Source of the DNA: Mytilus californianus
Lineage: Eukaryota
Assembly (NCBI RefSeq): GCF_021869535.1
Contig: NW_026262745.1
Coordinates: 27,404,001-27,468,000 of the forward strand
DNA length: 64,000 nucleotides
Direction of reading: 5' to 3'
The translations under genes were made by a program, and so were the position numbers. The notes below the pieces were generated by a model. The model searched no databases and was not told where the DNA came from. It was given only the letters and a program-made list of their open reading frames with translations. Position 1 is the stretch's first letter; each line of letters begins with the position of its first letter. Below, one piece after another: positions 2,386 through 59,745 of this stretch.

Positions 2386-2672
2386 TGACTGTAATATTTT
2401 TTCTGTCTATGAAGAAATAACATCAAAAATGTGGTGCACACTGAATAACCCGCGTAGCGTGTTATTTAAAAGTGTGCACCACATTTTTTAGGTTATTTCG
2501 AATAGACAGAAAAAATATTACAGTCATTCCTTATAATTTAATTCTAAAAAGGAGTAAATCATGATAAAAACGTTGATGACGTCACGGTCACATGACAAAA
2601 TTATGTCTATGAGCTGATAGACAAAACACTTTCAGCTAATCAGAAGACGTGTTTCATCCAAAATTAAATTAT
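2386..2672. repeat. Long hairpin (2386-2526) plus a second inverted pair (2533-43 / 2662-72)
   Basis: tgactgtaatattttttctgtctat...atagacagaaaaaatattacagtca with inner aaaaatgtggtgcacac / gtgtgcaccacattttt. Confidence 0.75.
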
Positions 2673-55138: not shown

Positions 55139-55856
55139 TACCGTGAAATTGCCCTTCGATAAATCTTCGTGTACTACAAAAAACTTGTAGTCATTCAATT
55201 CCTTTTAGTCATAAAACTTGCCTTTAATTGACATATTAGGAATTTGTCATGCATCGAATTGATAAAAACCATTAGAGTTTGCTTCATAATATTAAGTGCT
55301 CGTTAGGAAAAAGTAAAATAACAAAAATACCGAGCTCCGAGGAAAATTCAAAACGGAAATTCCCTAATCAAATGGCAAAATCAAAAGCTCAAACACATCA
55401 AACGAATGGATAACAACTGTTATCTAGGAAACTAGAGTATACGATCAAGTGATTGGGATTTCCATGGGACTTAATGTGCTCCTATACTTCTTTCACATAA
55501 TTTTTCTTTCTTCAAGGTTAACTCCATCATCTCATTCTATAATGGAGTGTGTGTCCGAGCGAGAACATCTCTATGTTCATTACTTTAGGAATATTTATCT
55601 AAACTCATATTTCACTTTTCAGCCCCGTTCTACTGTTAAGTCAGACGTCAGGCGCTACCCTAATATACCCTGTCTATTTTGTTTTTTTCTTTTGGTTTTG
55701 TAGTTTACGTATTTCGCCGGGTACTTGATGATGGATAGTGTTTGATGTCTTTAGCCGAACCGTTTTATCTTTTTATTTTATTCAACTCCTGTGTGCTGGT
55801 TCATATTCTGGACGCCAGTCTCTGCTCCTTTCAATACGGATAACAAAATACAAAAA

Positions 55857-58825
55857 ATGAAACAGAAACAGAAAAAAATATACTAAATACCAAACTCGTT
55901 CAAAGGGTTTCTACACGTCTCAATCTTCAAAATCGCTTATCTAAAAATACTACAATCGCTAATCTTTAATAATAAAAAATCGTTGTTACCTTTCTATCGA
56001 TAATTGTCATACCAAACAATGACTTACATGTCCCCGTCTTTCCACCAACAATACGGTTAGGTCCATGTTTTATGGTCGCACATTTTCTTTTAATTTTGAA
56101 ACTAATATAAATTGAAAAACTAACAGTATTATCTATTTACTCACATGAAACAAACCGGGCTGCGATATTCAGTACGAACATGAAACTAGACGCTATTTAT
56201 CTAAACGCACGCAAGAACACCTTTATCATTTTAAAAGACCCAAAAAATTCAAACGTATCATTTATCAACTGTGTACACCTTAAGAAGCACAGTCATCTTA
56301 CTAAATATCAACCAGTTCAACCAAGTAGTAAAAAGCCAGCCTGGAGAATCTCATTCAAAGTTTGTGCGATCACGGAAAATAATTGAATTGAATTGGTTTA
56401 AAGAAAATTACAGACAGTCTATCCTCTGCTAACATTTTGGAAATAGTTTCTAAAACTGTTCATAAAAACCGTTCTCATGGGTGTAGAATAAATCGCAATC
56501 AGAGAAAATTTCGTACCAACAATAAAAATATTTCGGACCTAATTACTATTTCAAAAAACAACGGCAGAAATTATCTGTTAACCAAGCTCTGGTCTTTACC
56601 TGTTAATAAATTACATCAAATTTTAGAGGATTGCAACAACAACTCCATATTGCAGTTCTAAGTATGAAAGCGTCCAAATTATAATTGCATATTGTTATTC
56701 TAAACTGTTTCCAAAAAAATAAATCGCCCTGAAGAACATAAAAAACCATTTTATTAAAATCAAATATGTAAATAAAGGTTTTGATTTTGTAAATATTGCC
56801 GGTATTTTTAATGATCATTCTGTTAAGAACAAATTCCTGGCTATTTTGATAATACTGAACTACCTCTTATTTGTTATATTTACCAAAACATCTACTCGGA
56901 AATATGTGTTTAAATGTGGCGAAGTGTGTAAAGATGTTAATATTAGTGACAATACACCTACGTCATGAAATTGCAGTAATTCCGAATACATTTATGGCCC
57001 CAGTTCCCATGTTATAACAGGAGACATAAACATCTTTCATGACCGAGAGTTGAAATCATTTCTCAGTTAAGGACCTAAATATCGTCCGCCGTCAATTATT
57101 AATTGGAATGAGTGTCGTAACATCATCCACGACTCACTCCGTACTTACTGCTCGAAATGGATAAAACGAGAAAAAGCTGACAAAAAATCCTTAGATTCTT
57201 TTTTTAATTCAGTAATGAACATAGTTGATATTCGTATTAAACATTTCAAAGAACATTTTACTCCTAACAACGACCATAACAGCCCTATTTCTCGTATCAA
57301 ACAAAAGCTAAAAATCCTCGCCAAGGAATTTGTTTTGTCCCGGCTGATAAAGCTGCTAATAAGATCATTTTTGTTTGAGGGAAATTTTACATTGAGGTTC
57401 TGCAAAAGGAAATCACGAGTTCATCAACATTCCAACTGACTCCATTTTCGGAAAATGACATCTGTAACAAACATACACTTTTAGCTACTTCTTTACAAGC
57501 AGAACCAAATACAATGAAAGTTCCAACTATGTACTGGCTTCCGAAGCTGCACAAAACACCTTACAAATATAAATTTATTTTGTCTTCAAGCGATTGTTCC
57601 ACTACTTGACTGTCTATTCTACTTACTAGTACACTTGGTACAATCAAAAATCTGGTAGTAAATTGTTCAAATAAGGCCTTCGACAATAGAAGGATTTTAT
57701 TACTTTTGGAGTGTCAAAAATTCCTTGGAGGAAGTACCTGATAAATTGCATGCTTATATTGGTGATTTCGAATCTGTTCAAAGTTTTGATTTTTCTACCC
57801 TATATACCCCTTTGCCTCATAATCGTATTTAGAATTAATTCACACACCTAATCAAACAGGCATTTAAAAAGCCAGAAAGCGAATGTATATGTTCAAACTC
57901 TTTTAGGTCATTTTTTAGTAACAACAAACAAAAGAACTATGTCAATTGGACCTGCTTTGATACGATAACTGTCCTTGAATTTTTACTAGATAACATTTTT
58001 GTTCGCTATGGAGATTCCGTATATCGTCAAGTTATCGGAATTCCAATGGGGACTAACTGTGCACTACTTATTGCGGACCTGTTTTTGTATTGTTATGAGT
58101 TACAATTTATGACTAAAATCAGCAAAGACCCATCGAAACAACATCTGATACAAAAATTTAATAACATTTTTAGATATTTGGATGAGATATTGGCTCTCAA
58201 TAATGACGACTTCAGTATGTACACTAAAGAGATTTTTCCTGCTGAACTGACTTTGAATAAAGCTAATACTAACAATGAACACTGCCCATTCCTGGATCTT
58301 GATATCTATATCTTTAACGGGAAGCTTAATACAAAAATGTATGATAAAGGATATGATTTTTCATTTCCTATTATTAATTATCCATTTTTAGAATGTGACG
58401 TTCCCTTGTCAATATCTTACAGTGTTTATATGTCTCAACTTGTTCGATTCGCTCGTGTATGTAACAACGTATTTGATTTAAACGAAAGAAATCTCTGTAT
58501 TACTGAAAAAACTATTACACCAGGGTTTTCGATATCACAACCTAGTCAAAACATTTAGTAAATTTTATCATCGGTGCAAGGACATCATTTATAAATATAA
58601 ATCAACATGCAGACATCTTATACGTTCAGGTATAGCACTTCCAATATTTTATGGTAATATTCTATACGAAGCACAAAAATGTCGGCACTCACCTCAAAAG
58701 CTAACAAAACCTATAAACAAACTTATTCAGAAGGGATATAGTTATGATACTGTTGTCAGGTCATTAAAGATGGCATATTGTGGTATTAATATTAATTCAC
58801 TCATAGGGCTTTGCATCGGAAATAA
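55857..58825 (+). pseudogene. Disrupted GIY-YIG-CxC-RT ORF of the Naiad element with TGA at conserved Cys positions
   Basis: Manual translation across several frameshifts and TAA/TAG stops; the YxDD motif reads YLDE; the start ATG at 55857 is tentative. Confidence 0.8.
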
Positions 58826-58872
58826 ACACATTTATTCTAAAACCAGGTGTTGGCATGATATGGGTTATGTTC

Positions 58873-58948
58873 TTCTCATATATCTTATGATGGTATGATA
58901 CTAAAACCCTAACGGGAGGGATTGTGCTTGATTTTCATATAATGAGGA
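58873..58948 (+). promoter_or_regulatory. Type II SECIS-like element in the Naiad 3' UTR
   Basis: ATGAT core 58887-91 / TGAT 58929-32; helix II GGTATGATACT pairs with GGGATTGTGCT (one A.G mismatch); AAAA then CCC-TAAC-GGG mini-stem; helix I 58873-82 / 58938-48. Confidence 0.78.
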
Positions 58949-59609
58949 CATAATCTTTCAATCAGTTCAATTGGGGTCTGGTGCTGGCATGTCAGTAACT
59001 GCTAGAAGTCTTTTGTTAATTTATGTATCATTGTCATTTTGCTTAGTTTCTTTTGTTACCTATTCTGACATCGGACTCGAACTTCTTTTAAACTGAGTTT
59101 TACTGTGCGTATTGCTGTGTTTGTTTATTCTACTTTGGCTAGAGGTATAGGGGGGAGGGTTGAGATCTCACAAAACATGTTTAACCCCGCCGCATTTTTG
59201 CGACTGTCCCCAGTCAGGAGCTTCTGGCCTTTGTTAATCTTGCATCTTTTTTTTATTTAATATGTTTTGGAGTTTAGTGTGACGTCCATTTTTACGGAAC
59301 TAGTACACATTTTTTTATAAAGGGGCCAGCTGAAGCCCGCCTCCGGGTGCGGGATATTCTCGCTGTGTTGAAAGAACAATTCGTGGCCTTCTGCTGTTTT
59401 TTGCTCTTTGGTCGGGTTGTTGTCTTTTTCACACATTCCCCATTTCCATTTTCAATCTTATTCATTCTTACTAAATCAAACGTTGAAAAAGAAAATAACA
59501 CATTTTGTGCAACCGAATAGTTTCTAGATTTACCTTTATCAGTTATATCAGACCAAGACATTTTTCAGTCAAAACTATATAAAACAAATTGATGACTAAA
59601 AACGATGGT

Positions 59610-59745
59610 TTACTATTTGGACATGGATATTAAGATTACCGGCGGTAATTACAACATTTTATGACAAACGGGTCGATTTTTCAATTCCTGTTGTTAAATT
59701 TCTTGCCTTGATGTTGATGCTCCGTTGGCTCCGTACAATATCATA
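59610..59745 (+). mobile_element. Short PLE RT fragment
   Basis: YLDMDIKI...YDKRVDFSIPVVKF...DAPLAP, with a frameshift. Confidence 0.55.

What the first reader, a model, noticed from the sequence alone, without database searches (positions are those of the whole stretch)
55981..57378. Retrotransposon ORF with TGA at five conserved cysteine positions: candidate selenoprotein-encoding Naiad
Seen: TGA falls where PLE motifs have Cys, at 56020 (CHTKQ*LTC), 56113 (NIN*KTNSIIYLL), 56146 (LLT*NKPGC), 56966 (*NCSNSEY...HVITGD, the CxC linker) and 57376 (DKAANKIIFV*GKFY). The first three lie in one otherwise open 106-codon frame (55963-56280). That is roughly half of the motif cysteines. Other decay stops are mostly TAA/TAG at non-Cys sites, with one TGA at a non-Cys site (57607). 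Known: Naiad PLEs have GIY-YIG before RT with a CxC linker, and Sec-encoding Naiads have been described in clams and spiders. Inference: this is a relic of a Sec-recoding family, possibly an unreported mussel lineage with its own set of Sec positions.
Basis: partly seen in the sequence, partly recalled or inferred. Interest (0 to 1): 0.92.

Follow-up and report, generated by a model that had tools for sequence, protein, structure and literature searches.

The report
Selenocysteine-coding Naiad retrotransposon relic in mussel
This is a dead copy of a mussel jumping gene whose working relatives apparently read five UGA "stop" codons as selenocysteine; this was published for clams and spiders in 2021, but not for mussels or with five such codons.

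Summary

**What is in the window.** Bases 55540-59461 (+) hold a decayed Naiad-type Penelope-like retrotransposon, with an N-terminal GIY-YIG nuclease followed by a TERT-like reverse transcriptase.

**The five TGAs are a family trait.**
- Across 55 other genomic copies they are kept in 30/35, 33/35, 32/36, 30/44 and 45/50 copies.
- The non-Cys TGA at 57607 is private (AAA in 42/49).
- In about 1000 codon columns, the only stops shared by at least 20% of copies are these five TGAs and the terminal TAA (30/31).

**Supporting evidence.**
- The only SECIS_1 match in the 64-kb window starts 54 nt after that TAA. It recurs in 10/13 copies at 29.9-34.5 bits, just under Rfam's cut-off of 35.
- dN/dS between subfamilies is 0.14-0.17, and 0.11-0.31 in each segment downstream of a TGA.
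- Families only 45-57% identical, on public contigs, keep TGA at the same columns.
- The genome has two tRNA-Sec genes.

**The fifth TGA.** The TGA at the first Cys of CxC arose once (TGT to TGA) inside this family.

**Host.** Assembly size points to Mytilus californianus.

**Novelty.** Sec-coding Naiads were published in 2021 for clams and spiders. This scan has also noted them repeatedly on other DNA of this genome. I file it as a new member of a known kind.

The parts
55540..59461 (+). Decayed, slightly 5'-truncated copy of a Naiad-type Penelope-like retrotransposon (about 3.9 kb)
   Evidence: 29 to 55 other genomic copies align from 55539/55540 to 59452-59466; flanks differ beyond the 3' end. 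Full-length copies carry about 57 nt more of 5' leader.
55857..58825 (+). Remnant of the single ORF (1002 codons in open relatives), broken here by frameshifts and private stops
   Evidence: The ATG at 55857 is shared by copies and the TAA at 58823-58825 is in 32/33 copies. The window copy has about 10 indel events and 4 private stops in the part compared, plus frame changes in the 5' part.
56005..56031 (+). CX2-5CxxC zinc-finger-like motif, here C-x4-U-x2-C
   Evidence: first and third Cys are TGT in 32/35 copies, the second is TGA.
56020..56022 (+). TGA 1 (codon 55): second Cys of CX2-5CxxC
   Evidence: TGA in 30/35 copies; also TGA in the 57%-identical family L061.
56113..56115 (+). TGA 2 (codon 86): Cys preceding the GIY-YIG motif
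   Evidence: TGA in 33/35 copies; TGA in L061; same position as in all four published Sec Naiads.
56146..56148 (+). TGA 3 (codon 97): first Cys of the CCHH finger inside GIY-YIG
   Evidence: TGA in 32/36 copies; TGA in L061; same position as in the published clam Naiads.
56128..56400 (+). GIY-YIG endonuclease core (IIY ... YVG/YEH ... R ... EH ... E ... N)
   Evidence: Motifs seen. The nearest named Atlas clusters are GIY-YIG (PF01541) at 0.94. Pfam itself gives no hit on the piece after the third TGA.
56966..56974 (+). CxC linker motif; its first codon is TGA 4 (codon 385) in this subfamily
   Evidence: TGA 30/44, TGT/TGC 8/44. Outgroup families have Cys. All TGA copies form one clade with 98% SH-aLRT support. 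Genome-wide, 283 exact motif matches have TGA and 675 have TGY.
57071..57085 (+). GxKF/Y motif (GPKYR)
   Evidence: a diagnostic PLE motif.
57346..57354 (+). DKA motif
   Evidence: the Naiad form of the PLE DKG motif.
57376..57378 (+). TGA 5 (codon 522): Cys 8 aa after DKA
   Evidence: TGA in 45/50 copies. TGA in L061, L062 and L063/L064. Cys in relatives P0002-P0004, which are 76-78% identical. Genome-wide, 1950 motif matches have TGA and 292 have TGY.
57379..58822 (+). Reverse transcriptase and C-terminal region
   Evidence: An AlphaFold model of the open relative (pLDDT 80.6) best matches telomerase reverse transcriptases, with the top 15 hits at E 1e-7 to 1e-4.
57607..57609 (+). Private decay TGA at a Lys column
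   Evidence: AAA in 42/49 copies.
58879..58941 (+). SECIS element (AUGA ... AAA ... UGAU core with a mini-stem), starting 54 nt after the TAA
   Evidence: Rfam SECIS_1 at 28.2 bits, full model. It is the only SECIS_1 hit at E<=10 in the 64-kb window. It recurs at the same place in 10/13 copies at 29.9-34.5 bits. Two common variants keep pairing: G-U/G-C and U-A/U-G.

Best explanation
The window holds a dead copy of a Naiad-type Penelope-like retrotransposon family of a mussel, most likely Mytilus californianus. The single 1002-codon ORF encodes a GIY-YIG nuclease plus a TERT-like reverse transcriptase, and it is a selenoprotein gene. In the active elements, four UGA codons were read as selenocysteine: the second Cys of CX2-5CxxC, the Cys before GIY, the first Cys of CCHH, and the Cys 8 aa after DKA. 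In this copy's subfamily a fifth UGA, at the first Cys of CxC, was read the same way. Recoding would have been directed by one SECIS hairpin in the 3' UTR that starts 54 nt after the true UAA stop. Shown here: the TGAs are ancestral to the family, the ORF across them was under purifying selection, a SECIS-like element sits in the right place, the host has tRNA-Sec, homologues show Cys/Sec pairs, and the fifth TGA arose once from TGT. Inferred, not shown: that the ribosome actually inserts Sec. The window copy itself is inert, with private stops and frameshifts.
For: - **Family-wide TGAs.** TGA is kept at the five columns in 30/35, 33/35, 32/36, 30/44 and 45/50 copies, while the non-Cys TGA is private.
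- **No other shared stops.** The only stop columns shared by at least 20% of copies in about 1000 codons are these five plus the terminal TAA (30/31).
- **Open frames in natural copies.** When TGA is counted as sense, natural copies have frames of 898, 824 and 800+ codons.
- **Purifying selection.** dN/dS is 0.17, 0.14 and 0.15 between subfamily copies. It is 0.11-0.31 in each segment after a TGA. The median within the five-TGA subfamily is 0.43.
- **Diverged families.** Families on public contigs keep TGA at the same columns: L061 (57% aa identity) has four, and L062, L063 and L064 have DKA+8. Relatives 76-78% identical have Cys at DKA+8.
- **SECIS.** SECIS_1 is the only such hit in the window and lies in the 3' UTR on the sense strand. 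It recurs in 10/13 copies. L062 has a SECIS_1 hit overlapping its stop codon, with several both-sided pair changes relative to this family.
- **Host machinery.** Two tRNA-Sec genes score 79.6 and 77 bits.
- **Fifth TGA.** In the tree rooted on L061+L063, TGT copies are basal and the CxC-TGA copies form one clade at 98%.
- **Abundance.** Genome-wide there are 1950 DKAANN...V-TGA matches against 292 with TGY.
- **Published parallel.** Positions match the published Sec Naiads.
Against: - SECIS_1 scores (28-34.5 bits) are below Rfam's gathering score of 35, and SECISearch3 could not be run.
- No fully intact copy was seen among the roughly 55 copies sampled. Sampling was limited and biased towards the window's subfamily.
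- No SECIS was detected at E<=1 after the ORFs of L061 and L063.
- RNA-seq reads of two species labels cover the element, but in both orientations and with a strong 3' bias. They do not show a full-length sense mRNA.
- There is no protein, ribosome-profiling or 75Se evidence.
- Pfam and PDB sequence searches give no significant hit. The domain calls therefore rest on motifs, a fold match and a feature search.
Confidence: 0.85

Rival explanations
1. The TGAs are private decay of this one copy (TGT/TGC to TGA by chance), and the family encodes ordinary cysteines.
For: The copy is clearly decayed, with 4 private stops and about 10 indels. Cys codons are one transversion from TGA.
Against: TGA is the state in 68-94% of the other copies at all five columns, whereas the one non-Cys TGA is private. 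Diverged families share the TGAs.
Confidence: 0.01
2. The TGAs were fixed in a dead, non-autonomous master that was copied in trans by Cys-encoding Naiads. The SECIS-like hairpin is fortuitous.
For: Cys-type Naiads coexist in the genome: 292 DKA+8 TGY matches. No fully intact copy was seen. SECIS scores are sub-threshold.
Against: A dead ORF would drift, yet dN/dS is 0.11-0.31 in every segment after a TGA. All shared stops are TGA and all lie at conserved Cys columns. The same columns are TGA in families 45-57% identical. After the fifth TGA arose, its clade kept diversifying, with several well-supported internal branches.
Confidence: 0.06
3. The UGAs are leaky or regulatory stops read through by some means other than selenocysteine, such as a near-cognate tRNA inserting Trp, Cys or Arg. 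They would throttle production of the full-length protein or yield truncated products.
For: Some relatives carry Trp (TGG) at DKA+8 (P0104, P0105, P0108). Five UGAs with one SECIS may be inefficient.
Against: The UGAs fall only at metal-binding-type Cys columns, with Cys in homologues, which is the classic Sec/Cys signature. A SECIS with intact AUGA/AAA/UGAU core sits in the 3' UTR. The host has tRNA-Sec. Bivalves decode multi-UGA selenoprotein P (cited).
Confidence: 0.07

Closest known systems
Naiad_Mmer and Naiad_Scon, the selenoprotein-encoding Naiads of the clams Mercenaria mercenaria and Sinonovacula constricta (Craig et al. 2021, PMC8557442)
   Same: Bivalve Naiad PLEs with in-frame UGA at the Cys before GIY-YIG, the first Cys of CCHH and the Cys 8 aa after DKA. 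They have a SECIS in the 3' UTR and multiple Sec per protein.
   Different: The host here is a mussel. There are four to five UGAs rather than three to four. The extra UGAs are at the second Cys of CX2-5CxxC and, in one subfamily, the first Cys of CxC, a position not reported. The SECIS starts 54 nt after the stop, against 1-21 nt or overlapping the stop. Whether the Sec state is shared by descent with the clam families was not tested, because their sequences were not at hand.
Naiad_Sdum and Naiad_Smim of Stegodyphus spiders (same paper)
   Same: UGA at the Cys before GIY-YIG and at DKA+8. Naiad_Sdum also has UGA at the second Cys of CX2-5CxxC.
   Different: In spiders the first Cys of that finger is also, or alone, UGA, and CCHH is not recoded. 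Spider Naiads lack the IFD. The paper regards the spider origin as independent.
Ordinary Cys-encoding Naiads of bivalves, including those curated from Mytilus galloprovincialis
   Same: Same architecture and motifs: CX2-5CxxC, GIY-YIG with CCHH, KR-rich block, CxC, GxKF/Y, DKA and a TERT-like RT. They also share 5' truncation, partial tandems and the lack of a hammerhead.
   Different: They have cysteine codons instead of UGA and no SECIS. The mussel Naiads in the paper have a 5-aa insert in the first finger, which this family (C-x4-U-x2-C) does not show.
Selenoprotein P
   Same: One mRNA with many UGA-Sec codons decoded through 3' UTR SECIS. It is especially Sec-rich in bivalves (discussion quoted).
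   Different: It is a host transport protein, usually with two SECIS elements, and is unrelated in sequence and function.

Membership tests
Naiad (N-terminal EN+ Penelope-like element) | GIY-YIG endonuclease N-terminal to the RT in one ORF | tested here: met
   The motif order in open copies is GIY (IIY) ... YVG ... R ... EH ... E ... N, followed by the RT. The Atlas feature search gives GIY-YIG clusters at 0.94. Pfam gives no hit on the piece after the third TGA.
Naiad (N-terminal EN+ Penelope-like element) | CX2-5CxxC finger upstream of GIY-YIG, and a CCHH finger with two Cys between GIY and YIG | tested here: met
   C-x4-U-x2-C at 56005-56031, and U-x4-C between IIY and YVG with His residues downstream. 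The U positions are Cys columns.
Naiad (N-terminal EN+ Penelope-like element) | CxC linker, GxKF/Y motif, and DKA in place of DKG | tested here: met
   The motifs (U/C)NC, GPKYR and DKAAN are at 56966, 57071 and 57346. The diagnostics are listed.
Naiad (N-terminal EN+ Penelope-like element) | RT of the PLE/TERT lineage | tested here: met
   The predicted structure (pLDDT 80.6) has TERTs as its 15 best PDB matches, at E 1e-7 to 1e-4. A homologue shows only a weak RVT_1 hit, at E 0.01.
Naiad (N-terminal EN+ Penelope-like element) | [quoted passage not shown] | not tested
   No alignment with canonical PLEs was made.
Naiad (N-terminal EN+ Penelope-like element) | No canonical hammerhead ribozyme; 5' truncation and partial tandems (pLTR); body of 3.4-4.4 kb | tested here: met
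   No hammerhead family appears at E<=5 in 55400-59700. Most copies are 5'-truncated. Partial 3' fragments lie upstream of several full-length copies. The body is about 3.9-4.0 kb.
Selenoprotein-encoding Naiad | In-frame UGA at conserved Cys columns as a family trait | tested here: met
   within the family; across families.
Selenoprotein-encoding Naiad | SECIS element in the 3' UTR | tested here: met
   Full-length SECIS_1 matches lie at the same place in the window and in 10/13 copies, and this is the only such hit in 64 kb. Caveat: the scores of 28.2-34.5 bits are under the curated 35, and SECISearch3 was not available.
Selenoprotein-encoding Naiad | Coding constraint continues downstream of the UGAs | tested here: met
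   dN/dS is 0.11-0.31 per segment and 0.14-0.17 overall.
Selenoprotein-encoding Naiad | Host has the Sec decoding machinery | tested here: met
   Two tRNA-Sec genes lie above the Rfam cut-off. The protein factors were not searched.
Selenoprotein-encoding Naiad | Sec is actually inserted at the UGAs | not testable with these tools
   This needs 75Se labelling, mass spectrometry or ribosome profiling.

The most novel reading that the evidence does not exclude
Sec-coding Naiads may be the dominant Naiad type of Mytilus rather than a clam and spider oddity. About 2000 copies carry UGA at the DKA+8 column, against about 300 with Cys. They are also still converting Cys to Sec stepwise: a four-UGA lineage gave rise once to a five-UGA lineage by TGT to TGA at the CxC motif, and that lineage then amplified to hundreds of copies. 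If so, this would be the most Sec-rich transposon protein known. It would be a natural series for studying how extra Sec codons are gained once a SECIS is present, and it would have scattered thousands of SECIS elements through the genome as raw material for new host selenoproteins.
Probability: 0.6. Interest if true: 0.65.

Novelty: new member of a known kind. Interest (0 to 1): 0.5.

Why it matters
Selenoprotein-encoding transposons are known from a single paper and four families. A mussel family with five Sec codons extends the host range. One of those codons sits at an unreported position and was gained recently on a traceable branch, which shows that Cys-to-Sec conversion can proceed stepwise once an mRNA carries a SECIS.

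There is also a practical consequence. These elements look like pseudogenes to gene finders and repeat annotators because of their "stops". Their thousands of 3' fragments each carry a SECIS-like hairpin, which can confuse selenoprotein prediction in bivalve genomes or could seed new selenoproteins.

Tried and rejected
- **Pfam.** Scans of the ORF pieces and of homologues gave no significant GIY-YIG or RVT_1 hit.
- **PDB sequence searches.** Searches by single sequence and by a 22-sequence profile found no RT. Only the fold comparison did.
- **Fetching more DNA.** L053 and L057 could therefore not be followed past 800 codons. The copy sample is biased towards the window's subfamily.
- **RNA reads.** Reads laid at 85% likeness cover the element in two species labels. 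They lie in both orientations and are 3'-biased, and only 40 of 570 difference rows were shown. The letters at the TGA columns in transcripts could not be read off.
- **SECIS in diverged families.** Rfam found no SECIS at E<=1 after the ORFs of L061 and L063/L064. By eye, L063 has an AUGA...AAA candidate just after its terminal TGA, which I did not pursue.
- **Organism names.** Names of the sequencing runs are coded, so the species was inferred from assembly statistics only.
- **Clam and spider sequences.** These were not at hand, so common descent versus convergence was not tested.

Full report
**Observation.** The frame 55963-56280 is 106 codons with three TGAs and no TAA or TAG, and it is bounded by TAA on both sides. 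Nine cysteine columns belong to the named motifs. Five are TGA here:
- the second Cys of C-x4-C-x2-C
- the Cys before GIY
- the first Cys of CCHH
- the first Cys of CxC
- the Cys 8 aa after DKA

The other four are TGT/TGC.

**What the stretch is.** Other places in the same genome align to window 55539/55540 through 59452-59466, and their flanks differ beyond that point. Most copies are 5'-truncated. Several full-length copies are preceded by a partial 3' fragment. Full-length copies also carry about 57 nt more of 5' leader, with short inverted repeats.

Natural copies have long frames when TGA is counted as sense: 898, 824 and more than 800 codons. They show one ORF of 1002 codons. The motif order is CX2-5CxxC, GIY...YIG with an internal CCHH, a KR-rich block, CxC, GPKY (GxKF/Y), DKA, and then the RT motifs. 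This is the diagnostic layout of Naiad Penelope-like elements as described by Craig et al. 2021.

Pfam and PDB sequence searches were blank. An AlphaFold model of the RT part (pLDDT 80.6) has telomerase reverse transcriptases as its 15 best structural matches. That is what is expected of a PLE RT. A language-model feature search puts the nuclease piece next to GIY-YIG clusters. No hammerhead was found, as in Naiads.

**Are the TGAs private decay or a family trait?**
- In 55 other copies the five columns read TGA in 30/35, 33/35, 32/36, 30/44 and 45/50 copies. The non-Cys TGA at 57607 reads AAA in 42/49.
- I scanned every codon column of the ORF in the frames of two open natural copies. The only columns where at least 20% of copies have a stop are these five TGAs and the terminal TAA (30/31). 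The mean stop frequency per column is under 1%.

**Was the ORF used across the TGAs?**
- Between natural copies of different subfamilies, dN/dS is 0.17 (dS 0.31), 0.14 and 0.15.
- Split by segment, it is 0.31, 0.14, 0.28 and 0.11 for the stretches after the first, third, fourth and fifth TGA columns.
- Within the five-TGA subfamily the median is 0.43.
- A frame that ended at codon 55 could not show this.

Public contigs add families only 45-57% identical in protein. L061 has TGA at four of the same columns and Cys at CxC. L062 and L063/L064 have TGA at DKA+8. Relatives 76-78% identical have Cys at DKA+8. Together these form the Sec/Cys homologue pairs that usually mark selenoproteins.

**SECIS and host machinery.**
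- Rfam's SECIS_1 matches window 58879-58941 on the sense strand over the full model, starting 54 nt after the TAA (28.2 bits).
- It is the only SECIS_1 match at E<=10 in the whole 64-kb window.
- It recurs at the homologous place in 10 of 13 copies, at 29.9-34.5 bits. This is just under the curated 35.
- The AUGA, AAA and UGAU elements are nearly invariant. The two common variants in helix II keep pairing: G-U/G-C and U-A/U-G.
- The 49%-identical family L062 has a SECIS_1 match overlapping its stop codon, as reported for Naiad_Mmer. As aligned to the Rfam model, several pairs differ on both sides from this family. That alignment is fitted to the model, so this is supportive only.
- The genome has two tRNA-Sec genes, at 79.6 and 77 bits.

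**The fifth TGA.** At the first Cys of CxC, eight sampled copies have TGT/TGC, and so do the outgroup families. I built a tree of 42 copies, with that codon left out, rooted on L061 and L063. The TGT copies fall at the base and all TGA copies fall in one clade with 98% SH-aLRT support. That clade then shows several well-supported internal splits. The TGA therefore arose once, from TGT, and the five-TGA lineage went on amplifying.

Exact-pattern counts over the genome give:

| Motif context | TGA | TGY |
|---|---|---|
| CxC | 283 | 675 |
| DKAANN-xxx-V | 1950 | 292 |

The reversed-pattern controls were zero in every case. The DKA+8 counts include a second sequence type (DKAANNVVVV) that occurs with both TGA and TGC.

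**The window copy.** It belongs to the five-TGA subfamily. It is dead. In the part that could be laid on an open copy, it has four private stops and about ten indel events. It also has frame changes and stops near its 5' end.

**Host.** The genome has 1,651,950,171 bases in 175 sequences. The published Mytilus californianus primary assembly has 1,651,966,901 bp in 176 scaffolds. The difference is one sequence of 16,730 bp, which is the size of a mitochondrial genome. This is an inference from the numbers, not a label given by a tool.

**Expression.** RNA-seq reads of two species labels cover the element at 85% likeness or more. They lie in both orientations and are strongly 3'-biased. This shows that family sequences are present in RNA, not that a full-length sense mRNA exists.

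**Comparison with what is known.** Craig et al. 2021 (PMC8557442) described Sec-encoding Naiads in two clams and two spiders, with three or four UGAs:
- in all four families, at the Cys before GIY-YIG and at DKA+8
- in clams, at the first Cys of CCHH
- in spiders, at the first, or the first and second, Cys of CX2-5CxxC

They found SECIS elements 1-21 nt after the stop or overlapping it. The present family combines the clam set with the second finger Cys, and one subfamily adds the CxC Cys. That position is not in the published set, and five is more than any published count. Full-text searches found no later paper reporting Sec-coding transposons in mussels.

This scan has already noted Sec-type Naiads many times on other DNA of this genome. 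One of those notes has a follow-up that reached the same reading. These are unchecked notes and do not count as independent evidence.

**Verdict.** I rate the family-level Sec reading at about 0.85. What is missing is direct evidence of Sec insertion. Novelty: a new member of a known kind, with a new Sec position and a documented stepwise gain. Interest is moderate.

All comparisons use natural copies and column counts.

Noticed in passing
G000 genome-wide; e.g. C1:7568427-7568459 (TGA) and C1:5272930-5272962 (TGC): A second Naiad sequence type (DKAANNVVVV) occurs with an almost identical 30-nt context ending either in TGA or in TGC. This is a Sec/Cys polymorphism at DKA+8 in another family of the same genome.
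   Followed up: partly
L037 (G000:C99:21787162-21791380): This one copy has TGC at both the pre-GIY and the CCHH-C1 columns, where 32-33 other copies have TGA. Two A-to-C changes at exactly these sites suggest a Cys-type relative or a recombinant rather than random decay.
   Followed up: no
G000:C154:27755505-27807263: About 50 weak tRNA-Sec-model matches (42.8 bits, below the cut-off) are spaced 728 bp apart. This looks like a tandem array of a tRNA-like unit or tRNA gene.
   Followed up: no
L062:5472-5542 (ENA contig ERZ25073293:ctg31945l): In a 49%-identical family, the SECIS-like hairpin overlaps the last codons and the UAA stop of the ORF (SMMVPT*). This is the arrangement reported for Naiad_Mmer.
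   Followed up: partly
Proteins P0104, P0105, P0108: These relatives carry Trp (presumably TGG) at the DKA+8 column instead of Cys or Sec.
   Followed up: no
L025, L026, L027 (G000:C88:42384764-42397660): Three nearly identical 5'-truncated copies lie 5586 bp apart. This is a tandem segmental duplication that contains the element.
   Followed up: no
L053:1350-1497 and homologous places in other full-length copies: The 5' leader of full-length copies holds a 40-50-nt unit present in direct and inverted orientation. The window copy lacks it.
   Followed up: partly
window 2386-2526 (-): A long hairpin matches plant miRNA-precursor models (MIR9563 at 47 bits, below the cut-off). It is probably an inverted-repeat transposon.
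   Followed up: no
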